Assembly: GCA_907165135.1 (NCBI GenBank)
Contig: OU015567.1
Location: forward strand, 2,666,001 to 2,730,000
Direction of reading: 5' to 3'
Source of the DNA: Oikopleura dioica
Lineage: Eukaryota > Animalia > Chordata
Length of the DNA stretch: 64,000 nucleotides
Below the pieces are notes generated by a model. It worked only from the letters and a program-made list of their open reading frames with translations. It ran no database searches and was not told the DNA's origin. Position 1 is the stretch's first letter, and every line of letters begins with the position of its first letter. The translations under genes were made by a program, and so were the position numbers. This document shows, in pieces, positions 16,432-63,508 of the stretch.

Positions 16432-18962
16432 ATGAAGGGTGCTGCTTATTTTTACGCCTCCGCTTAATTTTGCCCAATATCAATGAAATATTCAGCTGAA
16501 ACATGTTCCGCTCGTTGTGACGGAGGTGTAACGATTGCAAACGAGCCTTGCAATATTGAACCATGCTCTGTTTACACTGATGGATCGAACATCTTCGGCG
16601 ATGGCGGAACCTTCGACTCCATGGATGATTGGACTTGCGCGACTGCTCAATGCTCTGCTTCGATTGTCCAGCCAGGCTACTACTCTGACAATGCCGTTTT
16701 CGTCTCTGGTCGAGGCACTCCTGGTGCAGTTCTTGCTCAAGAATTTGACGGGACTACTCTCCTTGATCAGGATTACATCGGCCGCGTTTTCTTCAAACCA
16801 GCAGCTGAGAATCAACCTGGATGGGTGAAGATGATGGTCAGATGCAACAAAAAGTCAGACAACTCGAACAAATATCTTGCTATTTCTGAAACATACTCTG
16901 TTCCAGCCGGGACGAAGGATTCTGTCTGGATGGGAATCGATATCGATTGGAATCCGAGAGAAAGTGCGAACGGAAACCCAGACAATTTCAACTACGCATT
17001 GTACTTGGTCTACAAAGGCAACAACAACGAACTCGAGGATTTCTACCAAGATGAGTCATTTATCGTTCCCGCTGGTGGTGCTACAACAACTGCGCCTCCT
17101 ACGACGACTTCAACAACAAGCTCGCCACCTGACGGCACTTTCTCATTTGCTCTCGGGGACACCACTTTTACGGGAGAATTGACAGCAGAAAACAATGTAC
17201 ATTTCAAAGGCATCAAGTACGCCACTGCTGAAAGATGGAGATCTCCGGTAATGAAAACAAGTTGGGAAGCGACTTATGACGCGACTGAATATGGCCAGAT
17301 ATGCATGACTGACTGGTGGAAATCATCCTCCCCTAATGCCGATGAATATTCTGAAGACTGCCTCTACATGAATGTAATCACAAAGCCCGAGTACATCCAA
17401 AACGGCGAGAAAAAACCAATCCTTGCGTTTATCCACGGCGGCGGACTGGTCGGAGGAGATAATCGAAGAGAATACAACCTATTGGTCGATACTGAAGATG
17501 TAGTCCTTTTCTCGATGGCATATCGCGTCGGACCGTATGGGTTTTTGTATGATCACGATGGCCCAGAAGAACACAAAGGCAACTGGGGATTCCTCGATCA
17601 GCAAGTGGCCCTTCAGTGGATTCAACAATTTGGCGAGGCCTTTGGCGGTGACATTGACCAAGTAACGATTGGTGGGTGCTCAGCTGGAAGTTGGTCGACT
17701 TGGTACCATCTCACAATGCCCAGCTCCTGGCCATATTTCCACAGAGCAATTTCAAACGGAATCGGGGTTTACGGCCAGTACGACGAGCCGACGAGCATCG
17801 AAGTGAACAAAATGTGGAACGATTACGTCGCTGAACAAGTGAATTGCCCAGATGTTGATTGTCTCCGTACCAAATCGGTTGACGATTTGAATAAGCATTT
17901 TGCAGGCGTCGGTGGACTTGGAGGAATCAACATTCCAGAAGTATTCCACGCTACTGGATTTGGACCACATGTGGATGGAATTTTAGCCAGCAAGACTCCT
18001 CTTGAAGCGCTTTTCGATGGAGAAGTCAGAAAAAATACGCCGATTTCATGGAATTACAATCGAGATGACGTTTGGAATCTTCTTGGAAACAGGCTTCCTG
18101 GGATCATTGGCGTAAGTGATTTTACAAAGACGGTGATAATTTGGTTTTTCTTTTTTTAGTCGATGGTCGAGTACCATGACAAAGTAGACGTGTTGGTTGA
18201 TGTCCAAACAGCGTCTGGTTTCTTCTATCCATCAAATTGGACGGATGCGATGCTCAAGACAACTTTCGGAGAAGAACTTTTCAACCGTCACCTCGTCGAC
18301 CTCTTTGGCTGCCCAAATGGAGAAAATGGGGAAATCGTGGACTGCAAACCAAAAATGAATCGATACATGAACGCTCAAATGTGGAGCTGCAACACCCAAT
18401 ATGGCTTTTCTGGCGCTCCAATGACCGATCCCGATATCGGACCAATTTATCCACTCGAGCTTTTTAAAGAAAACTGCGTCGCAAATACAAGAGCATGCCA
18501 CTGTCAAGATGCAGCGTGGGTTTTTGGAAAAAACCCAATCGCAGGAAATCAACTTGAAAAGGCTTGGCGACAGGCTGGTCTCGATTTTTGGGGACAATTC
18601 ATTCGAAACGGAACTTTCCCAGAAAACCACTCCTTCGGACAGATAAAAAATATCAAAGAACTGAACGGGTAAAACTGAATTTGAAGGATCGACCGTACGT
18701 TTTTTTTAAGAAAAATCAATCTTGCGGACGAAAACGGAATCATTCATGATTATGGATACGAAGAAGAATGTAACGCACTCAATGCTCTTGGCGATGAAAT
18801 CGGGCACATGAGAGTCTATCAAAATGGATACTACCATACTTTTGATGCTAATGGTAAAATTCATTGAATACTATGAAAATATCAGAACAAATAGCAGTAA
18901 TGTTCGTAAAAATTGAACGTGAAAATTTCTCTTCTTATCTAGGTCACCAGGGCAAGTTCTAG
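16432..18962 (+). CDS. Tandem paralog of the CBM-like carboxylesterase (copy 2)
   Basis: Same domain order and the same three downstream intron positions (18112-18159, 18669-18710, 18854-18942); high protein similarity to copy 1; first junction ambiguous. Confidence 0.88.
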
Positions 18963-20020: not shown

Positions 20021-23000
20021 TTATTTTTCAACAGTATCTTCAAGAAGAGCAGCACCCTTGTAAAACATTTCAGCGAAAAGGTTTTCGACGTAGTAGTTCG
20101 AAATCGGCTGTCCCAAGAAGGTTTCGACGGAGCGCTCTTCAATCTGGAAGCATTTGTCGCCCTCGTGCCATGCATGAGCTTCGGACTCAATTTGACCAGA
20201 TCTAGAACGATGATGGAAAACAATGGACGAGGTTTTTTCTTACTTTGTCGAAATTGTTCCTTCGTTGTCGATGGTGTAAGAGCCTTCGTTCAAGAACTGA
20301 CCCATAAGACCTTCTGGATTTTTGATTCCGAAAACATCTTCCAACTCGATTCCCAAGCTTCCAACTCCCGGCTAAAAAAGTCTTTTGCTGTTAAACAGGG
20401 AGAGGCATTACCTTGACAGTAAGTCGGAATCGGAAACCATCTTGCTGAACGATCTCGACATTGTGTCTGTTTCGGTGGTGCTCGTGGTCAGCGGGCTAGA
20501 ACTGCTGATCATTGAATAAATCTTCCTTTCTCACCTTCATTTTGAGATGAACATCGTAAAAGTACTCATCAACGGTGTCCTCGGATGGATTGTATTTGAT
20601 CAGCAATTTGCCATTTTCGTAGACTTCGAGAGTGTCCTAGAAAACCTTTTTTCTAGATCTTGAATTGAATAATTACTCGAGTAAGAGCCATTTGGGTTCC
20701 TTGAGGACTGGTGTAGCCAATGGCAGTGAGGAATTGCTTCTTGCCCTTCTGGACGTTTTTGAAAAGACCGTTCAATTCCAAGTTTGAGCTCGCATCACTA
20801 AGCGGGTGTCAATTAGATAGACAATGTTTAAAATACCTGATGAGATCGATGATCGATCCAGAGACAGCATTCACATCGAGACAGACGGGAGTCTCGCCAG
20901 GAGATGTAACTCGGAAGTGGGGATCACCGTAGCCAGCCATGCTGCTGCAGTAATAAGAGCCAACAGTGTTGGTACAAACAGGCATTGGCTCGGAGCAAGG
21001 ACAGCCGCCGGCGTAGGAATTAGCAGAGTTGCAAGGGGCGCACTCGTCGATATCGCCACAGCCATTTCCGGCATCACTGTAGGTAGCTGCTTGATAATTG
21101 TTGCCTTTGAGAAGATGAAATAATATCGTTTTGGAAAAACGTATCTGTTATAAAATAAATCTTTTCCTGATGATCCAGTGTAGGTTCCGCTTGAAGAAGG
21201 GTAAGTTGATGATCCAGATGATCCGGAGTTTGAATAGCTTGATCCAGAAGATGAAGATGGGTAGTTGGAACCGGATGATCCAGAGGAAGCTGGGTAACTG
21301 GAGCTTGGGTATGTAGCTGAACCAGCTGGGGCATTGCCAGTGCTAATCGTGCCAGTAGAAGCATCATAAGTCGACGCCCAATCAGGTTTAGCTCGATCGC
21401 CATCACCTGGCGCCATTCGTCCATTTCCTTTAAGACCTTTGCCGCACATGCACTGAGGACCATTGCTAGTGTCCTGGCAAGTGGCGCCACCGACACAAGG
21501 GTTGTAGTCGCCACAAGTCTGCATGGGAGCATAGCAAGTGATTCCATCGCCAGTCCATCCGCTTGGGCAAGTGCAGTTGAAACCAGTTTGAGTGTTGGTA
21601 CAAGAGGCGTTGGACGCACAGTTGTGAGTTCCAAGGGCACACTCGTCAACGTCGTCTTGTTCGCAGGAATAGCCGTTGCCTGAGTAGCCTGTGCTACAGG
21701 CGCAAGAATAGCTACCAGGAGTGTTCATGCAAGTGGCGTTAGGAGCACAGTTGTCAGTGTTGGAATAGCACTCATCGATATCCTTGCATCCGTAGCTGCC
21801 GACGCCTGAGCCGGTGTAGCCAGATGGGCAAACACAGGTGTAGCCACCGTAAGCGCCTGGTTGACAAGTTGCCATTGGATCGCAATTTGCAGCGTCGCAG
21901 GGATTGACGTATACAGGCGAGCACTGATAGCCGTTACCTTGGTAGCCGTTGTTGCAGGTGCACTTGTACTGACCGTAATTGTTGGGAAGGTCAGTGCAGT
22001 AGGCGTTGACGTGGCAATTGTGCTGACCAGTGGCACATTCGTTGACTTCGTTAGGCTTGCAAGTGTAGCCATTGCCGTTGTAGCCGTTATTGCAAGTGCA
22101 CGCATAGCTTCCCACGGTGTTGACGCTTAAAATAAATAAGATCAAATTGAATCAAATATTGAAGATTCTCCAGGCAAGATCTCATTTGACATTGAGAGAA
22201 TGCTTAAAAATTATTCAAAAAAATCAGACAGAAAAACAAAAGAGCCTCGCCAGTCGGATTTAATTGATTGGACTCGTTCTATAAAAAAACCTGAATTTGT
22301 AACAAAACTAAATGAAGAGCCGCCGCAACATGGTCATCACTATCCGGCTAAGGAAATTTTTCAGAATTCAATCCCTATACTCGAAGCTGCCTAAAGAACC
22401 CTCTTACCCGAAGTGTACAATTTTTGTCGATTTGACCTTCCTCTCGAGATAATCTTCTGAAAATCTCAGATCATACCAAATCAATGATTTTGTTTCGAAC
22501 TGCACTTTAAGATTTTCCGAAAAATGAATACTTAGCGGTTAAACTGATATAAGTTATTTTGTTACTATAAAATTTTTATGTGACGACTACGTAAAAAAAC
22601 TTTTCTTATTCTTTTCTAATGATGATTTTCGAATTCTCCATACTGGAAAACCTATTGAAAAACTCAAAACCGGCGGAAAGGTGACTCCAAGAGATAGAGG
22701 GAAATTTTTCCTTTCTTGGAGCGAGCTGGGTGGCGTGAGAAAATCAGTACTCGTGGAGTACTAACTGGGCTTATCACGCCGAAATTTTGCGAAAAGGTGC
22801 GTAAGTCTTGTGCGAATACTCATTTGAGTTTTCAGGTCATTCCGACCCACCAGTTCCATTCAGCGGGTGATTAAATCCCGAAATCGACAAAAATTGTACA
22901 CTTCGGGTATAGGGGTTAAATATAAATAAATAAGTAGATACATAATAGACCATTATTAATGGTCGATAATTTATGGACCAAAATAACTGGTAAAATACAA

Positions 23001-24678
23001 AAATGAAAAAGATAACAGTTCTATGATGAGGGCAAGTTCAGCTTTGTCAATGGCGGCTTCAAGAGAGAAGTTAACAATTTGAATCATTCTCCTGCGAATT
23101 CATCGCTCTCATTTTCAAAGAATAAATTAATTGAGACTTTGGAAGGCCCAAAACCCCTCAGGACATGAGCAAAACCCCCAAGTATGAATAGTCAAAATGA
23201 TCCCTAGCTTCTGAGGATTCTAAAACTGTATTATATTCCCTGATTTATAAGCTCTAAAATGAGCTCATTTTTCATCAAGTTTACCTACTTATGGAGATAC
23301 GCTGTTAGAACTAGCGAAGACCATCAAAGAGAACGAGGAAAAAAACACACATTTCTTCGAGACGCAACAAAAAGAAATCTATTCCCTTCAAAGGCAATTG
23401 CATCTTCTAGAAACTGAAAAAGTGTCAATGGCTTCAAATCTAAAAACAAAAGATAAAACGATTGCCGATTTGCAAAAAGAACTCCAACAGCTCAAAAAGC
23501 GAAACGATAAATTGGTTTCTGAAAATACAGATCTCATGAAAATTAAATCGGACTATGAAAATATGAGCGAGATGTTTGGTCAATTCAGCGTTCAATTTAT
23601 GGAAAGCCGAGGTTTTTTGATACAATTTTATAGATAAGTTCAAATTCATTGAAAGGGCTCTCACCCACGTGCAAGATTTGCCATGAGATCTACGATACAA
23701 ATCTACATTTTCAAGCGACACTCAAATGTGGTCATACTTTCGGGGAAAACTGCATTCGCGACTCTTTACAAAGTAATGGCCGCTGCCCAGTTTGCAACAA
23801 AAGAGCAAATGCTTCTGATATAAACCGAGTCTACTAACATCTTTCAATAAAAGTCTCTATTTACCATTGTGCGTATGTATCGCAGTTATGACTTCCATTA
23901 GCGCATTCGTTCACATCCTTCGGAGTGCAGTTAACTCCGTTGCCTTGGTAGCCATTCTTGCAAATGCACTGGAATGACCCGACAGTATTAACGCATCGAG
24001 CATTGTAGTGACAGTTGTCAGTTCCCTTGTAGCACTCGTTCACATCAGGCTGAGAATACACGTTGCCATTGTTGTTGGTGTAGTTGACCTCTTCGTTTGG
24101 AGCGTAAAGTCCTTCGTATGTGTTCTTGTTTCCAGTGTTCTTGTTGTTATTCTGCTGCTGTTGTTTTTGAGCGTTTGGTCGTGGTTTTTGGGTGACTGGT
24201 TTCTTGGTTGGCCGCTGAGTTTTTCGAGGAGCCTCAGTTTTTGGCCGCTGAGTTGGTCGATTTTTAGGTCGCTGAGTCGGTCGCTGGGTTGGCCGCTGAT
24301 TTGGTCGACTGGGCCGTTGAGTTTGCTTTTGTTGGTTTTGGGAAGGCCGGGTTGGACGGGGCTTTGGAGTGACCTTCTTGATTGGCCGCTTGGTTGGCTT
24401 GTTGAACCACTTTGCTGGAGGTCGAGCTTTCTCGCCGTAGTCGGTGTCGTAGTCGGCGTAGTAGCCGTAGACAGCATTTTCGTAGTCGTTTTCGTAAGCT
24501 TGGAAGGAAGCAGCTAATGCACCGGGGCCTTCAAATGCGGCAAATGCGTCTTTTATGATTTCAAAACAAATTAATTCTGCTTTACTAGTTTCTCGCTGAC
24601 TTGATTTTTTGTAACCATTCCTGGATTAACCTCAACCTGAGCCTTCGCAGCGAGCACAAACGCGGAGAACAGCTTCAT
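20021..24678 (-). CDS. Secreted EGF-array protein with C-terminal inter-alpha-trypsin inhibitor heavy chain C-terminal (ITI_HC_C-like) domain
   Basis: [14 protein letters not shown] leader; Tyr/acidic then QRPT-repeat region; about 8 EGF/EGF-Ca repeats; YGDPHF, EGLMGQF and CFQ...NYYVENLF match the ITIH C-terminal pattern; stop 20021-20023. Confidence 0.85.
22398..22917. mobile_element. ~520-bp MITE with piggyBac-like ends, intronic
   Basis: Perfect 29-bp inverted repeat 22405-22433 / 22881-22909, extending to CCC...GGG ends; TTAA on the right flank, degenerate on the left. Confidence 0.7.
23280..23837 (+). CDS. Coiled-coil + RING finger protein nested antisense in an intron (5' end uncertain)
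   Basis: Heptad-rich exon then CKICHE...CGHTFGENC...CPVC; stop 23837; AATAAA at 23846-23851. Confidence 0.78.
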
Positions 24679-57968: not shown

Positions 57969-60900
57969 ATGAAGAGAAAATCGCTGCTGGATTTTCTCAT
58001 CGCTCTGGCGATTGGGTAAGTTGTATTTTTGAAGACCCAGGGTCCCAAGTTCTTCATCTTCAGATTTCTCATTGGCGACGTCTTGCAAGCATACCTCAAG
58101 CAAAAACGCTGCCTTCCCGAGCTCATCCGCGCCCGTCTCGAGTCAAAAGCCAAGCTTCGATTTCAACCCTCAAATTTTGACCTCCAAGAAGCTCCAGAAG
58201 TTGACTTTGGCATTTCAAACTCACAATCATCTTCTGAAGAAAATAATTTTGATCGAATCCGGCAAGAAATTGGGGGAAAGAGAAAGAAACGAGTTTTTAT
58301 TGCTATTCACTCAACGCCTGATTATTTGCTTACTCGTGGCCAGGAAATGCTCCAAAAAGGAATTTTCTAGTCTTTAGTTGTATCATCATCCCATTGGCAT
58401 TCAAAACAAACCCTTTTTCGAGCTTTTAAACAGGCAATAAAAGACACCTGGCTCCAAGAAATCGACCCTCGAATCGCAACCGTCCGTTTTATCTCCTCCC
58501 CCGTCCCAGGTTTCCCGACTCTAACCCTCCCTGGCGTCGACGATTACGCCTACCCGCCGCAGAAAAAATCATTCAAGCTCTATGCATACTTCAACTCCAT
58601 CGCCGACGACTACGACTGGTTCATCCGCGTCGACGACGATCTCCATCTTCAGTTCGATCTTCTTATTCAATTTTTGAACAAAATAAACCCGGACGAGCCG
58701 CATTACATTGGAGGAACTGGATTTGGAAGAAATGCTGATGATTATATTCCTCATGGCACGGCTTTTTGCATGGGCGGCTCTGGTGTCATCTTTTCTCATA
58801 AACTTATCAGAAATTTGAGACCCTATCTGACGACATGTATAAAGGTATCATGGAAGCATTCTCCATATTCCGTATCTACATAAGAGTTTCTTAGAATTGT
58901 CAACATAACGACAGATTGAGAAAAATTATCCAACAAAATTTGCTTGTAGAGTTATGCTTTTTTACTCAAAATTCTAGAACCTGATGACCGAACACGAAGA
59001 TGTAGAAGTTGGCCGCTGCATTTGGACTCATTTGAACATGGACTGTACCAAATCTTACGAAACCAACGCAATCCTCCATCAAAACTGGAAAAAGCATGTT
59101 GCACCTGGCGAAATCGGCTACAAAAACGACATCGACGCCGAACTCGACCTCGACGACAAAATTCTCCGGAGCGCGATCACGCTACATGCTGTCAAAAATC
59201 CGTCTTCTCAAATTTCCGTCCGAATGAGAATTCTGCGACATCGAGGAGAACTTATGTTCAACAGGACTCAGGAACTGCAGAAAATGATCAAGAGCTCGCA
59301 CGGGCGAATGAAAGAGCAGATGAATGGGTGTATTTGGGATTATGTGAAGAACATCGATACGAAATACACGACAAGTTTGTTCAGTTTGGATCCGATTCCG
59401 CAGCTGAAATTGGTTGAGCCGTTTTTGACTGCGATTCGACAGCTGAAATATGTGAAGAAGGACATGACTCTCAATCACATGCTCTATCAATGCGTAACAA
59501 GGTAATCGTATGAAGTATGGATTTATTATCACGGTTAATATTTGTAAAAGGCAGTACTATTTGATTCATCAATATAAAATAGTTTTTATTGAAGGAGGAA
59601 ATGCATGCACAACAATTTGATATGCTCACGATTCATTTCAAGACAAAATTATCTTCATCAGTAGTCTGATATTTTCAGCATACGTTCAATTCACTTATAA
59701 TTCTGGATGACTCTAAAGTTTCATTTAAAAATCAAATCTTGCAACTTCTGATATTGAATCTCTAAGCGATTCTTCGTTTATATCTACAAAAAATCAATCC
59801 TCCCCCCTGCTTGGTTTCGATTTTTGATAGTCTTGATTTGGCCCCCTTTCAAGCGTTAAATTTAATTCGGTATTGATTGGCATACAAATCCATCTTCTTC
59901 TAAAACTTGGCTGATACAAGGGCATTTTGGGCCTTTTTTTTGACAATTCTTCAAGCAGTTTGCATGCCACCTTAGATAAATGACGAAATACGGAAAGTTT
60001 CGGTATTTGAATTTATTTGATCATCCTTTTCAAGAAATCTGAAAAATTAAGAGTATGTGCATATTTGATTGTCTGATTATCATCAGATTCAATTAGAATA
60101 CTTTTATCGCCACCGCGATAGCCAAAATACCCACTATTATCGTGATGCTCAGTGGTAAATAAGTATAAATCTTCAATATTCTGCTGTCAGATCTAAACTG
60201 ATCTTCAAACGATATCAATTTTGAATTAAGTTTGCTTATGTTCCAACTATAATTGTCAATTTGATTTATCAAATTATTCATTCTTTCTTCAAATGAAGCC
60301 ATAAGTAAAGCTTGGCTCTCAATTTGACGCATTTTTTCAAGATTGATGTTTTCAATCAGCTCATCATGTTTGTTTTTCATTTCGAGCTGCTCCTGTTTTA
60401 TCTTCGTCAGCTCGGCTTTAATGAGTTGAAGCTTGCCTTCAATAATCTTGTCGGTCGCCGATTCAATTATCCCTTGAATTGCTTGATTTTCACTCTCAAT
60501 TGTCATCAATTCCACTTTTTCTTCGAACGCATTTGTTCTAAGATTGTGATTTTCGACTTGATTCTCAAAATCCGCCACTTTTTCAATGAGTTCTTCATTT
60601 TTCTTTTTCAGCTGGTATTGTTCTTCCTCGTAATTGCCTATCTTGGTCCTGTAGAATTGAAGTTTGCTCTCGATAATCATTTCGATCTCTGCCTTTGAAA
60701 GGTTTTGAGATTCATGAGAACGCGAGTCGTTTTCTCTGTCATATGTTACGATGCTTTCAGAGTATTTCGAATTTTGCGACATTTCTCAAAAAATTATTTT
60801 CGTCTTTATAAATTATTAATTGAACAGAGCAGTAGTCTTAGCTTCAGTATTTTCCCTTCAACAAAAGTACAGTCAGATGTCAATATTTACGCTTAACAAA

Positions 60901-63508
60901 AGAGTTTGAAGAGTCTTGTATGAAATAATTGCCCTTTTTCCACACACGCGATATTGAAGACCGCCATTGCGAGTTCTTAAATCAAATTTCTAGCGACATG
61001 AAGGCCTATTTACGATCCTTTTACGAGCTGTCTCGCTGGCATTTGACGATGTTTTCTCAAAAAATCTCGTCCTCATCCTTTTTTCGCGAGCCAACGCCTC
61101 TTAAAATCGACTTGGAGAAGAAAGCGCAAAGATCTGTTACTTTAATTGTACCGCTTTTTGGCCGAATGGACAATTTCAAACGCTTCCTTGGTGTTTTCAA
61201 AACTCTGACAGAAACAGACGATGATCTCAATCTAATTGTTTCACTCTCTGGAACGCCTGAAGAGCGATTTTCTTTGATCGACGTTATTCAGTCAATTTTA
61301 CCGACGACCTCGTATCAACGAGCCGTGAAGGTGATCACGTGCAATATTCCGTTCAAGAAGGCCGATTGTCTTCAAAAAGGAATCGATCTGTTGAAGGGGG
61401 AAGATTTGTTCTTCGTTTACGATGTGGACCTGATTATTGATCAAGGTTTCTTGAGGAGGATTCGAGCTGTGACCGAGTCGGAAGTTTACTTTCCAGTTTT
61501 GCTTAGTCAATTCGAAGCGTCGAAGAAAAATGGACCAGGGAACGGTTGACACGCGCTTTTTGCATTCTTTTCTAAATTGCAATTCTTTGAACAAGTCTCA
61601 ACCATATTAAAAGAGGTGACAGAAACGAACGGCTTCTGGCGAACCTGGGGTGTTGGTCCTGTAGCCATGACAAAGAAAACCTACGACTCATCAGATCGCT
61701 ACAATCAAACCATCTCTGGCTGGGGAAATGAAGATACTGAGTTGTACGAGAACTTCATCACCAAAAAGATAAAATTTTCCCGCTCCCGCGACGCTGGAAT
61801 CTTTCACCCCTGGCATGCGAAGAATTGCGAAGGCCTGCCCAAAGAAACAACGCAGTATTCTGCTTGTGTCAAGGTCAATTTGGAACACAGGATGAATTTG
61901 AAGAAGATGGGAGATATTCACCTGAAAAACTCGAATAAATTCTTGGAGTTTTTGGAGACGGATCAGATGATTGTCTCGCCTCCCATGCCTATCAACAGGA
62001 AAAAAGCGGTGCTGGTAAGCGAGAATATTCTCTTAGTTTTACTTTCAAGTATTGAATATTTTTAATTGATAGAGGATTAATTGGATTTTCCGAATGGATG
62101 ATTCTTTTCAAAATTGCAATACTTTGATAATATTAAATGAAAGAAAAAAGACGGCAGTATATAATCGTTTTTGTAGCTCCTGACGTTTGGAAAGTCTGGT
62201 GATGACTTTATCGGTGAGATCTTCAATTCGCACGAAGAAGCGTTCTACATCCACGAACCCCTGCATCCGCTCTACAAGCTCGGTTTCAAAAGCAGCTCCG
62301 TCATTCCCCGACTCAACCTTCTCGGCAACCAGCTCAGCTGCAACTTCGAGGATCAATACGACCAGCGCCTCTCCTGGGCAAAATACTCGCAAGACATCAC
62401 CGCCGACCAAAAACTCGACCAACACGGCAACTTTCCTTTTCGAAGCAAACATCGAAAGCTCTGCGCTCCGCCCTTCTGCCATTTGGATCTTTCCGACGAT
62501 TTGAAAAAGTGTGAAAGTGTTTGTCCTCCTGCGAATGTTGAGCAGCTCAAATCAAGCTGCGAGCCCTTGGTTACGGTGGCTAAGGTTATCAGATTTGTGG
62601 AAATTGAGAAGATAAAGAGCATGGCCGTGAGGATGAACCTTGACTTGAAGATAATGTTTTTGACCAGAGATCCTCGGGGTATTTTGGAATCAAGGAAGAG
62701 TTCAAAAACACTTAAAAATTATAAGTTACAAACCGATTTAGCGAATTTTCATTGAGAAGAAAATATGAAAGCATATTCTTCGATCAATGATTAAAGGTTT
62801 TCAAATTAAGGAATCTGCATCGAGCTAACTCTCATAGATTTAGTACCAGAGTTTCGCTCGGCTAGTAAAAATAAAATTCGTTTATGTGTAATTAAAAAGA
62901 AATTTATGATTTCTTTTAATTTTTAATCGAAATAAAATTTGAGCTCTTTGAAGACTCACAAAAACAACAGGCAACTTTGGCCCACTAGTCGCTACCGATG
63001 ATAAAATAAATTCGATGGATTTCGTCTGCAAGCACACAGAAAAAATCCTCAGTCAAATTCAAAACGACCCTTGGCTGAGCTCCCGATCGCATATTATCCG
63101 ATATGAAGACTTTGTGATGAATAGAGGAATTGAAACTACACAAATTCTGAGACATTCTGGATTGGGTTCGGACTCGAAGGTCAAGGCTTACATTGATGGG
63201 TTGAATGTTGATCAGAAAAGTGTCAACAGCTGGATGGAAAATTTGCAATCAAGGAAGAGTTCTCGATCACTCATCGACGATGAGCATTGTCATAAAAAAG
63301 CTTTATGGGGTTTTTCTTTTAAAAGATCCCTTTCGATCAATTCTAGAGCTCGTCAAACAGCGCTGTTGCAAAAATCCAGCAAATGTGCGAGTCACCAATG
63401 CGGCGCCTCGGCTACCTGCCCGTCACTTTCCGACCTACCTCGACTGAACTTGGCGGCAACGACAACATTGACTCGTTCAGTTTCGAAGGAAACACCTATC
63501 TTGTCTAA
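57969..63508 (+). CDS. CHSY1: Chondroitin synthase (CHSY-type, two GT domains) fused in frame to a C-terminal carbohydrate 6-O-sulfotransferase-like domain
   Basis: Type II anchor; YPPQKKSF, RVDDD, CMGGSG, HEDVEVGRC; IVPL, YDVD, VYFP, GFWR, GWGNED; GT-AG intron 62015-62176 joins KKAVL to LLTFGKSG..F.GEIF; then FYIHEP, RDPRGILESR, RYEDF, IQQMCESPMRRLGY. The symbol names the family; exact orthology is not established. Confidence 0.85.
60093..60782 (-). CDS. Intronless coiled-coil protein with C-terminal transmembrane tail, nested antisense in a synthase intron
   Basis: 229-aa ORF, heptad-rich, ending LPLSITIIVGILAIAVAIKVF; lies inside intron 59502-60993. Confidence 0.7.
   Translation of the reverse strand: MSQNSKYSESIVTYDRENDSRSHESQNLSKAEIEMIIESKLQFYRTKIGNYEEEQYQLKKKNEELIEKVADFENQVENHNLRTNAFEEKVELMTIESENQAIQGIIESATDKIIEGKLQLIKAELTKIKQEQLEMKNKHDELIENINLEKMRQIESQALLMASFEERMNNLINQIDNYSWNISKLNSKLISFEDQFRSDSRILKIYTYLPLSITIIVGILAIAVAIKVF

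What the first reader, a model, noticed from the sequence alone, without database searches (positions are those of the whole stretch)
20021..21104. ITIH C-terminal GDPHF domain grafted onto an EGF array: possible protein-to-glycan ligation tag
The last, truncated EGF runs straight into [20 protein letters not shown], followed by EGLMGQF and [26 protein letters not shown], matching both ends of the ITIH pro-domain. Established: ITIH1-3 are cleaved at this Asp-Pro bond, the new C-terminal Asp is esterified to chondroitin sulfate of bikunin, and it is later transferred to hyaluronan. Here the VIT and vWA domains are replaced by EGF repeats. Inference: the EGF rod could be covalently anchored to a polysaccharide of the extracellular matrix by the same chemistry.
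Basis: partly seen in the sequence, partly recalled or inferred. Interest (0 to 1): 0.75.

Follow-up and report, generated by a model that had tools for sequence, protein, structure and literature searches.

The report
ITIH-type self-cleaving tail on EGF protein
A secreted Oikopleura matrix protein made of EGF repeats ends in a true relative of the self-cleaving tail that vertebrate inter-alpha-inhibitor heavy chains use to bond themselves to a sugar chain; whether it does the same chemistry here is untested.

Summary
Window 21104-20021 (minus strand) is the last six exons of a nine-exon gene (24678-20021). The gene is the ortholog of Oikopleura dioica CBY09576.1/E4XEH3, which is annotated only as "EGF-like domain-containing protein". 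RNA reads confirm four of the introns.

The roughly 235-residue C-terminal domain starts at GDPHF and is homologous to the ITIH C-terminal region over its whole length:
- hhalign gives 98.7% probability, E 2.8e-16.
- A family profile finds real ITIH3-like proteins among 1.84 billion sequences, E 7e-11.

Pfam ITI_HC_C itself misses this protein, and Pfam VWD hits no member scanned. The predicted fold is a VWD-like beta-sandwich (Z 15 to the MUC2 and VWF VWD domains). Its best predicted-structure match is ITIH3 (TM 0.74). GDP sits in the turn between strands 1 and 2.

Asp-Pro-His is present in all 88 relatives that span the site. The domain is always C-terminal. No disulfide can bridge the cut. 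O. dioica attaches this module to EGF arrays, a laminin-G-annotated protein and mucin-like stretches.

Self-cleavage is likely (about 0.7). Ester ligation to a glycan is plausible but unproven (about 0.3). It is weakened by paralogs with almost no cargo and by FCGBP, where the anhydride is simply hydrolysed.

This is a new variant of a known kind, of moderate interest.

The parts
24622..24678 (-). Exon 1: start codon and signal-peptide-like N-terminus ([19 protein letters not shown]). It is followed by a probable GA-AG intron.
   Evidence: 17 of 19 residues are identical to P0149 residues 1-19. The signal peptide is inferred from the sequence; no predictor was run.
23865..24550 (-). Exon 2: acidic/Tyr stretch, a very basic Pro/Thr/Gln/Arg/Lys-rich repeat region (..[19 protein letters not shown]..), EGF1 and most of EGF2.
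   Evidence: It aligns to P0149 residues 20-254 at 82% identity. One search gives EGF_CA/EGF_3 on P0149.
22126..23864 (-). 1.74-kb GT-AG intron that splits EGF2. It holds plus-strand ORFs, including a RING-finger-like ORF at 23649-23837.
   Evidence: Joining ...HNCDTYAQ|C|[11 protein letters not shown] restores a complete EGF. The Bergen ortholog has a 1492-nt intron at the same place.
21167..22125 (-). Exon 3: end of EGF2, EGF3-EGF7 (EGF7 has only 5 Cys), then a Ser/Gly/Tyr/Pro-rich mucin-like linker.
   Evidence: EGF_3 6.4e-42 and EGF_CA 2.9e-30; 88% identity to P0149 residues 256-588. The Cys count was made on P0149.
21105..21166 (-). Probable non-canonical GA-AG intron of 62 nt between the linker and the last EGF.
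   Evidence: no in-phase GT donor is available. The junction ..TYTGSSG|NNYQAATYS.. matches P0149 ..SNSG|STYQAASYD... It is not covered by RNA reads.
20837..21104 (-). Exon 4: truncated calcium-binding EGF (7 Cys), strand beta1 (MAGY), the GDPH motif, strand beta2 and the first conserved Cys.
   Evidence: EGF_CA model positions 1-35 of 43; strands at model residues 47-50 and 54-57 flank GDP. RNA joint at 20797|20837.
20917..20928 (-). Gly-Asp-Pro-His codons. The predicted scissile Asp|Pro bond lies between 20923 and 20922.
   Evidence: DPH is present in all 88 relatives that span the site. Asp and His are required for cleavage in FCGBP D10 (PMC10880436).
20677..20797 (-). Exon 5 of the gene, the second exon of the GDPH domain (..[40 protein letters not shown]).
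   Evidence: 97.5% identity to P0149 residues 671-710. One search shows RNA joints on both sides.
20535..20636 (-). Exon 6, GDPH domain.
   Evidence: 91% identity; joints at 20495|20535 and 20635|20676.
20412..20495 (-). Exon 7, GDPH domain.
   Evidence: 96% identity; joints at 20371|20412 (18 reads) and 20495|20535.
20244..20371 (-). Exon 8, GDPH domain. It holds the G-L-M-G-Q-F motif (20314-20294) shared with ITIH (HGLIGQF).
   Evidence: 98% identity.
20021..20201 (-). Exon 9: end of the GDPH domain with the second conserved Cys (20152-20150), the FLG...Y.VENLF tail, and the stop codon at 20023-20021.
   Evidence: 95% identity. The exon 8/9 junction is confirmed only by P0013 and P0149, not by reads.

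Best explanation
The gene encodes a secreted matrix protein of about 860 residues. Its parts, in order:
- signal peptide
- a strongly basic Pro/Thr/Gln-rich stretch
- a rod of seven EGF-type modules
- a Ser/Gly-rich mucin-like linker
- a truncated calcium-binding EGF

Shown:
- The C-terminal domain is a VWD-like beta-sandwich.
- Its first two strands are joined by Gly-Asp-Pro.
- It is homologous to the ITIH C-terminal domain over its whole length.

Inferred from the chemistry established for GDPH sites: once the sandwich folds in the secretory pathway, the Asp side chain attacks its own peptide carbonyl, helped by the His. The Asp-Pro bond breaks, leaving a transient Asp anhydride at the new C-terminus of the EGF rod (...SSMAGYGD).

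Inferred from the cysteine pattern: the only two conserved cysteines of the domain lie after the cut, so no disulfide holds the halves together. The EGF rod and the 26-kDa sandwich are then linked at most by strand beta1. This is as in ITIH and unlike mucin or FCGBP VWD domains.

My estimates:
- homology 0.97
- self-cleavage about 0.7
- anhydride captured by a sugar hydroxyl (ITIH-style ester) about 0.3
- otherwise it is hydrolysed
For: Homology:
- The family profile finds ITIH3-like proteins of Clarias (E 7.4e-11), Ambystoma and the hemichordate Ptychodera.
- hhalign of the larvacean clade against true ITIH C-termini gives 98.7%, E 2.8e-16 over 209 columns. It aligns GDPHF, GL(I/M)GQF and the ..Y.V..LF tail.
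- Paralogs touch Pfam ITI_HC_C: P0140 at 28.2 bits (cut-off 27), P0032 at 3e-5, P0043 at 3e-4.
- The protein language-model search ranks an ITI_HC_C cluster first, score 0.94.

Fold:
- AF2 mean pLDDT is 81, above 90 for most of the domain.
- The best predicted-structure match is an ITIH3 cluster, TM 0.74.
- Among solved structures, Z is 15.1 to the MUC2, VWF and MUC5AC VWD domains and 11.4 to RGMB. The next unrelated fold scores 4.5.

Cleavage logic:
- DPH is present in 88 of 88 relatives that span the site, although mean column identity is only 22%.
- Asp and His are both required for cleavage in FCGBP.

No tether: many complete paralogs have only two Cys in the whole protein, both downstream of the cut.

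Position: the domain is always at the extreme C-terminus, behind unrelated cargo.

Selection and expression:
- The domain exons are the best conserved part between two O. dioica lineages, 91-98% against 82-88% elsewhere.
- The gene is expressed and spliced as modelled.
Against: - No experiment on this protein exists. No peptide ending in ..YGD or starting with PHF.. is on record, and the house-proteome supplements hold no peptide lists.
- Pfam ITI_HC_C does not reach this protein or its ortholog even at E 10.
- The truncated EGF was modelled with low confidence (pLDDT below 50). Its seven cysteines could not be paired. A disulfide from one of them into the sandwich cannot be formally excluded for this particular protein.
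- I could not read model coordinates to measure Cys-Cys distances.
Confidence: 0.68

Rival explanations
1. First reader's reading; a sub-case of the best explanation. After cleavage, the Asp anhydride is attacked by a hydroxyl of a polysaccharide: chondroitin or another glycosaminoglycan, or another house or matrix glycan. The EGF rod then becomes ester-linked to the matrix and the C-terminal sandwich leaves as a pro-domain, as in ITIH1-3.
For: - Nearest relatives are ITIH C-termini, and the ITIH clade is nested inside this family.
- There is no bridging disulfide, the module is strictly C-terminal, and the cargo is interchangeable: EGF arrays, a laminin-G-annotated protein and mucin-like stretches.
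- ITH3's Asp is esterified to GalNAc C6 of chondroitin sulfate (PMC8267560).
- The same window carries a chondroitin synthase family gene (CHGN).
- Sulfated glycosaminoglycans are present in the pre-house rudiment and are needed for its inflation (PMC3390340).
Against: - Paralogs P0046 and P0092 have only about 15 residues between signal peptide and GDPH, so in them the sandwich itself must be the product.
- In FCGBP all GDPH sites are cleaved, but the anhydride is hydrolysed and no cross-link was found.
- No acceptor such as bikunin was identified here.
- The gene matches none of the published oikosin in-situ primers, so a role in the house is not established.
Confidence: 0.3
2. Maturation only. 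The Asp-Pro bond is cut and the anhydride is hydrolysed. Strand beta1 stays in the sheet, so the two chains remain a non-covalent pair, as in SEA-domain mucins. The beta-sandwich is itself the working part, for example a matrix-binding or self-assembly module at the end of the EGF rod. Cleavage serves to stabilise it, as shown for FCGBP D10.
For: - The fold is VWD-like, and in FCGBP cleavage raises stability and protease resistance (PMC10880436).
- Short-cargo paralogs show that the sandwich can be the main product.
- The domain is the most conserved part of the protein.
Against: - Classic VWD GDPH proteins keep the halves together with a disulfide (C472-C611 in FCGBP), which this family lacks.
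- The domain is never followed by C8 or TIL modules and never sits internally.
- The closest relatives are ITIH pro-domains, which are discarded.
Confidence: 0.4
3. No cleavage. GDPH is only a conserved structural turn, and the protein works as one chain with a C-terminal binding domain.
For: - Nothing specific.
- ITIH4 lacks the cleavage consensus and is not coupled (my own knowledge, not tested here).
Against: - D, P and H are invariant in 88 of 88 sequences, while the rest of the domain has drifted to about 22% mean column identity.
- The motif sits in the same beta1-beta2 turn where cleavage is documented.
Confidence: 0.1
4. Artefact: chance motifs in non-coding DNA, or a pseudogene.
For: None.
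Against: - The exons are open.
- RNA joints are seen.
- The domain exons are 91-98% identical to the annotated ortholog.
- Relatives are found at E down to 1e-112.
Confidence: 0.01

Closest known systems
[quoted passage not shown]
   Same: - Homologous over the whole domain (hhalign 98.7%).
- (G)DPHF lies at the N-terminal edge.
- Two conserved Cys, both after the cut.
- Shares the GLIGQF motif and the ..DY.V.NLF tail.
- Sits at the extreme C-terminus.
- No disulfide crosses the cut.
- Best predicted-structure match (TM 0.74).
   Different: - The cargo is an EGF rod, not VIT plus VWA.
- About 19% identity in the hhalign alignment.
- The Pfam model misses it.
- It lacks the 'HRVWKKHP' insertion and the long loop before the second Cys seen in ITIH.
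- Cleavage, chondroitin sulfate coupling and any bikunin-like partner are not shown.
GDPH-type VWD domains (FCGBP, MUC2, MUC5AC, SUSD2, BMPER) and the RGM/hemojuvelin domain
   Same: - Same beta-sandwich fold (Z 12-15; RGMB 11.4).
- GDPH lies in the turn between strands 1 and 2.
- The Asp-Pro autocleavage chemistry is expected to be the same.
   Different: - No member scanned hits Pfam VWD.
- No Cys in strand 1, so no inter-fragment disulfide.
- Not followed by C8 or TIL.
- Always terminal, never internal.
Hedgehog/Hog C-terminal autoprocessing domain (analogy only, from my own knowledge)
   Same: The logic is the same: a constant C-terminal self-cleaving module behind interchangeable N-terminal cargo. 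It could load a non-protein nucleophile onto the cargo's new C-terminus.
   Different: - Unrelated fold (Hint).
- Thioester chemistry.
- The nucleophile is cholesterol.
Plant Root_cap proteins (PF06830)
   Same: Appear as look-alikes by structure (TM 0.57) and by language-model features (0.92).
   Different: No sequence-level test was done here. Treat as a lead only.

Membership tests
ITI_HC_C (PF06668) domain family | Scores above the Pfam gathering threshold (27 bits) | tested here: not met
   P0013 and P0149 (the window's ortholog, 91-98% identical in this domain) and P0001 get no hit at E up to 10. Single exons of the window also get none. Among paralogs, P0140 scores 28.2 bits, P0032 24.2 and P0043 20.9.
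ITI_HC_C (PF06668) domain family | Homology to true ITIH C-termini over the whole domain | tested here: met
   hhalign 98.7%, E 2.8e-16, 209 columns. Profile search E 7.4e-11 to ITIH3-like Clarias, 1.4e-4 to Ambystoma and 4.6e-4 to Ptychodera.
ITI_HC_C (PF06668) domain family | DPHF cleavage consensus at the domain's N-terminal edge, with two conserved Cys after it | tested here: met
[quoted passage not shown] | VIT and VWA domains before the C-terminal domain | tested here: not met
   Pfam on P0149 finds only EGF-type families. The true ITIHs P0129 and P0141 show VIT + VWA + ITI_HC_C.
[quoted passage not shown] | Asp-Pro cleavage with ester transfer of the new C-terminal Asp to chondroitin sulfate | not testable with these tools
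   Needs biochemistry and mass spectrometry.
VWD domain (PF00094) | Pfam VWD hit | tested here: not met
   No VWD hit for any family member scanned, at E up to 10 and at E up to 0.01.
VWD domain (PF00094) | VWD beta-sandwich fold with GDPH between strands 1 and 2 | tested here: met
   Z 15.1, rmsd 2.8-3.0 over 164-167 residues to MUC2, VWF and MUC5AC VWD. Foldseek E 8.5e-6. Strands at model residues 47-50 and 54-57 flank GDP.
VWD domain (PF00094) | Inter-fragment disulfide that holds the cleaved halves together (C472-C611 in FCGBP), and a C8/TIL context | tested here: not met
   Strand 1 has no Cys. Eleven complete family proteins have only two Cys, both after the cut. No C8 or TIL was found. 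For the window's own protein, the pairing of the 7 Cys in the truncated EGF is unresolved.
Oikosin (described Oikopleura house protein) | Identity with a published oikosin | tested here: inconclusive
   None of the 41 primer pairs of Table S3 (PMC3390340) matches the Bergen locus L001 at up to 2 mismatches. No member of the 90% cluster is named oikosin. Oikosins 1-8, 18 and 32 have no primers there, and accession numbers could not be mapped.

The most novel reading that the evidence does not exclude
The ITIH-type GDPH sandwich is a portable C-terminal 'glycan-ligation tag'. In larvaceans it has been attached to many secreted cargos: EGF rods, a laminin-G-annotated protein and mucin-like peptides. 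Each cargo would be esterified through its new C-terminal Asp onto a glycosaminoglycan or another polysaccharide of the matrix or house. It would be a carbohydrate counterpart of Hedgehog's cholesterol-loading domain. The vertebrate ITI heavy-chain link would then be one specialised survivor of an older system.
Probability: 0.25. Interest if true: 0.85.

Novelty: new variant of a known kind. Interest (0 to 1): 0.5.

Why it matters
As far as I know, the ester between an ITI heavy chain's C-terminal Asp and chondroitin sulfate is a rare kind of covalent protein-glycosaminoglycan bond, described so far only for vertebrate ITI-family proteins. How the discarded pro-domain drives that bond is poorly understood.

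This work shows the same pro-domain without VIT or VWA. It sits behind at least four kinds of cargo in one small tunicate, and six or more loci are named in O. dioica. That gives a simple comparative system for asking two questions:
- Does the pro-domain alone suffice for cleavage?
- Does it alone suffice for transfer?

It also raises a testable idea for how some matrix or house proteins of Oikopleura might be fixed to polysaccharide.

Public databases call these proteins only "EGF-like domain-containing" or "uncharacterized", so the domain assignment itself is a useful annotation.

Tried and rejected
- Pfam on single exons gave only EGF. The exons are too short to detect the C-terminal domain.
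- A PDB sequence search with an exon, with P0001's domain and with the 4-sequence profile found nothing real. No ITIH pro-domain has been solved.
- The first AF2 run, on a 4-sequence alignment, was unusable (pLDDT 44). The 49-sequence alignment fixed this.
- A word search with the 424-aa ORF missed the true ortholog because of the length window. The ortholog surfaced only through cluster look-up.
- I tried to tie the gene to a published oikosin, without success:
  - no primer match in the window (14 of the 41 pairs, at up to 4 mismatches) or in the Bergen locus (all 41 pairs, at up to 2 mismatches)
  - no accession or peptide match in the supplements
  - no paper cites the accessions
- Cluster look-ups for 30 family members gave names only for O. 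dioica and for true ITIHs. The claim that the non-ITIH branch is restricted to larvaceans therefore stays unproven.
The public spliced proteins P0013 and P0149 of the ortholog stood in for it (91-98% identical per domain exon).
- I considered a chance motif and a pseudogene and rejected both.
Full report
**What is in the sequence**

The region 21104-20021 is coding on the minus strand but is split by very short introns.
- [20 protein letters not shown] at 20931-20872
- EGLMGQF at 20314-20294
- [26 protein letters not shown] at 20152-20075
- stop codon at 20023-20021

They lie on six exons: 21104-20837, 20797-20677, 20636-20535, 20495-20412, 20371-20244 and 20201-20021.

The whole gene runs from 24678 to 20021 in nine exons. 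It includes a 1.74-kb intron (23864-22126) that splits an EGF module and contains plus-strand ORFs. It also has two probable GA-AG introns.

**Support for the gene model**

A word search with the large EGF exon found a 741-aa cDNA-like relative, P0001, with the same architecture. Three further relatives followed. Each window exon aligns in order to them.

A profile search returned P0013, a 239-aa public protein that starts at MAGYGDPHF and carries every predicted junction. Its 90% cluster contains Oikopleura dioica CBY09576.1 (UniProt E4XEH3, 874 aa; P0149) and CBY30562.1. Both are named only "EGF-like domain-containing protein".

The window's nine exons tile P0149 residues 1-874 without gaps:

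| Part | Identity to P0149 |
|---|---|
| N-terminal low-complexity part | 82% |
| EGF exons | 88% |
| Exon 4 (truncated EGF plus GDPH motif) | 89% |
| Exons 5-9 of the GDPH domain | 91-98% |

The window is therefore the ortholog in another O. dioica lineage.

RNA data show joints at 20371|20412, 20495|20535, 20635|20676 and 20797|20837, all GT-AG on the minus strand. The RNA came from marine metatranscriptome contigs at 95-99% likeness and from species-labelled RNA-seq reads at 90-95%. The last intron and the GA-AG intron were not covered.

P0013 and P0149 served as referenced stand-ins.

**Is the C-terminal domain ITIH-like?**

Pfam alone says no. Neither the window's exons, P0001, P0013 nor P0149 hit ITI_HC_C or VWD at E up to 10.

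More sensitive tests say yes:
- A profile of four larvacean domains, searched against 1.84 billion representative proteins, found 137 proteins at E up to 1e-3.
- These include P0063 (E 7.4e-11), P0115, P0127, P0129 and P0141. Pfam shows that all five carry ITI_HC_C, and that P0115, P0129 and P0141 also carry VIT and VWA.
- Their sources name three of them ITIH3-like, from Clarias, Ambystoma and the hemichordate Ptychodera.
- Profile-profile comparison of the larvacean EGF clade with true ITIH C-termini gives 98.7% probability, E 2.8e-16, over 209 columns. It runs from five residues before GDPHF to the final ..Y.V..LF and aligns GLMGQF with GLIGQF.
- Intermediate paralogs touch the Pfam model directly: P0140 at 28.2 bits against a cut-off of 27, P0032 at 3e-5 and P0043 at 3e-4.
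- A language-model search ranks an ITI_HC_C cluster first.

The Pfam model starts about 34 residues after GDPH (P0129: the family-profile match starts at residue 666 and the Pfam match at residue 700). This partly explains why it is blind to the motif end.

**Fold**

With a 49-sequence alignment, AlphaFold2 gives mean pLDDT 81, above 90 for most of the domain. The truncated EGF stays below 50. Strands at model residues 47-50 (MAGY) and 54-57 (HFRV) flank Gly-Asp-Pro.

| Comparison | Result |
|---|---|
| Solved structures: VWD domains of MUC2, VWF, MUC5AC, MUC5B, FCGBP | Foldseek E about 1e-5; Z 14-15.1, rmsd about 2.8, about 165 residues |
| Solved structure: RGMB | Z 11.4 |
| Next unrelated fold | Z 4.5 |
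| Predicted structure: ITIH3 cluster | TM 0.74 |
| Predicted structure: ITI_HC_C cluster | TM 0.60 (query) / 0.78 (target) |
| Predicted structure: SUSD2-type VWD | TM 0.58 |
| Predicted structure: plant Root_cap | TM 0.57 |

This agrees with Yeshaya et al. 2024 (PMC10880436). They noted that ITIH3, ITIH5 and ITIH6 carry GDPH between the first two strands of a VWD-like sandwich that no database annotates as VWD. The superfold is VWD-like and the nearest kin is the ITIH pro-domain.

**A family, not a single protein**

Named members outside the ITIHs are all from O. dioica, and they carry different fronts:
- this 874-aa protein
- a 1784/1866-aa protein with 18 EGF_CA modules (CBY37716, CBY15215)
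- a 332-aa EGF protein (CBY07260)
- a protein annotated as laminin-G-domain-containing (CBY33142)
- low-complexity proteins (CBY20515, OKI2018 g10324)

The many unnamed members come from marine metatranscriptomes and metagenomes.

In a maximum-likelihood tree the ITIHs form one clade (95/87) nested among these proteins. The window's clade is well supported (100/99). The O. dioica members sit on several deep branches.

**Features that bear on mechanism**

1. DPH is present in all 88 hits that span the site. The 49 without it are fragments that begin downstream. Mean column identity of the family alignment is only 22%. In FCGBP D10, both the Asp and the His are needed for cleavage.
2. The domain has two conserved cysteines, at D+14 and about D+190. 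Eleven complete proteins have no other cysteine at all. A disulfide across the Asp-Pro bond is therefore impossible in those proteins, and there is no Cys in strand 1 anywhere in the family. Cleaved VWD proteins such as FCGBP are held together by exactly such a bond, C472-C611. ITIHs share the two-cysteine pattern (P0129).
3. The domain is always at the extreme C-terminus.
4. P0149 has 50 cysteines, made up as follows:
   - 36 in six full EGFs
   - 5 in EGF7
   - 7 around the truncated EGF
   - 2 in the sandwich

   The total is even, but the pairing of the odd ones is unresolved.

**Most likely mechanism**

I take the protein to be secreted and the sandwich to cut itself at Asp|Pro (codons 20925-20923 | 20922-20920) by the established GDPH chemistry. 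That would free an EGF rod ending in ...MAGYGD from a 26-kDa C-terminal piece that is not covalently tethered. I put this at about 0.7.

What happens to the transient anhydride is open.

For ITIH-style esterification to a glycan:
- the kinship with ITIH
- the missing tether
- the terminal position
- the interchangeable cargo
- a chondroitin synthase family gene in the same window (CHGN hits at 58984-62062)
- sulfated glycosaminoglycans in the pre-house rudiment (PMC3390340)

Against it:
- P0046 and P0092 have only about 15 residues between signal peptide and GDPH. In them the sandwich must be the product, and cleavage looks like maturation.
- In FCGBP every GDPH is cleaved, yet the anhydride is hydrolysed and no cross-link was found (PMC8267560).
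- No acceptor protein was identified.
- The gene could not be linked to any published oikosin.

My split is ligation about 0.3, hydrolysis with or without continued non-covalent association about 0.4, and no cleavage about 0.1.

**Novelty and score**

The domain type, its fold and its chemistry are known. Three things are new relative to databases and to the papers I could search:
- the ITIH-type pro-domain exists without VIT or VWA
- it sits behind EGF rods and other cargo
- it is expanded in a larvacean

That makes it a new variant of a known kind. I score interest at 0.5. It is a solid, useful domain assignment with a clear experimental question, but the exciting part (ligation) rests on inference and has real counter-evidence.

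**Limits**

- I had no access to model coordinates.
- Most family members have no taxonomy.
- The AF2 alignment included ITIH rows, which may favour the ITIH match slightly.
- The scan's other notes identify the genome as O. dioica. I confirmed this only through the roughly 90% identity to named O. dioica proteins.

Noticed in passing
window 22126-23864 (intron of the EGF gene); plus-strand ORFs 23398-23637 and 23649-23837: The 1.74-kb intron that splits EGF2 holds plus-strand ORFs. One of them has a RING-finger-like motif (CKICHEIY...CGHTFGENC...CPVC). This looks like a gene nested in an intron on the opposite strand. A few RNA-seq reads of run X12 lie at 23514-23837.
   Followed up: partly
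window 21105-21166 and about 24551-24621: Two introns of this gene can only be spliced in frame as GA...AG, the non-canonical type known in O. dioica. The Bergen ortholog has a GA-AG intron after residue 19 as well (L001 3058-3119). Neither intron in the window was covered by reads.
   Followed up: partly
L001 6744-7256 and 7281-7580, against window exon 20797-20677: Intron positions differ between the two O. dioica lineages. The annotated Bergen gene model splits the window's exon 5 with two extra introns (513 and 300 nt) around an 8-codon micro-exon. That part of the Bergen model may be an annotation artefact or real intron turnover.
   Followed up: no
window 21167-21500 and 21040-21104 (P0149 residues 456-600): EGF7 has only five cysteines, and a lone extra Cys (..AGNGC) sits just before the last EGF. 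The Ser/Gly/Tyr-rich linker of about 110 residues may be an insertion inside the C5-C6 loop of EGF7. Its many Ser-Gly pairs could be O-glycan or glycosaminoglycan attachment sites.
   Followed up: no
window about 24100-24430: There is a strongly basic repeat region ([40 protein letters not shown]...) at the N-terminus of the same protein. It is a possible polyanion-binding (sulfated glycan) stretch and the least conserved part of the protein (82%).
   Followed up: no
window 58984-62062, plus strand: Three ORF pieces hit Pfam CHGN (chondroitin N-acetylgalactosaminyltransferase / chondroitin synthase family) in colinear order (model positions 11-118, 252-396 and 414-505). This confirms that a chondroitin synthase-type gene lies 38 kb from the GDPH gene.
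   Followed up: partly
protein P0103 (264 aa) against window 20839-21650: A public 'protein' of this locus is mostly an out-of-frame read-through of the EGF exon that runs into exon 4. It is an example of prokaryote-style ORF calling on eukaryotic DNA polluting protein collections.
   Followed up: no
window 16483-18672, plus strand: Two adjacent ORFs look like a carboxylesterase-type gene with an N-terminal extra module and a Thr-rich linker. I did not examine it here.
   Followed up: no
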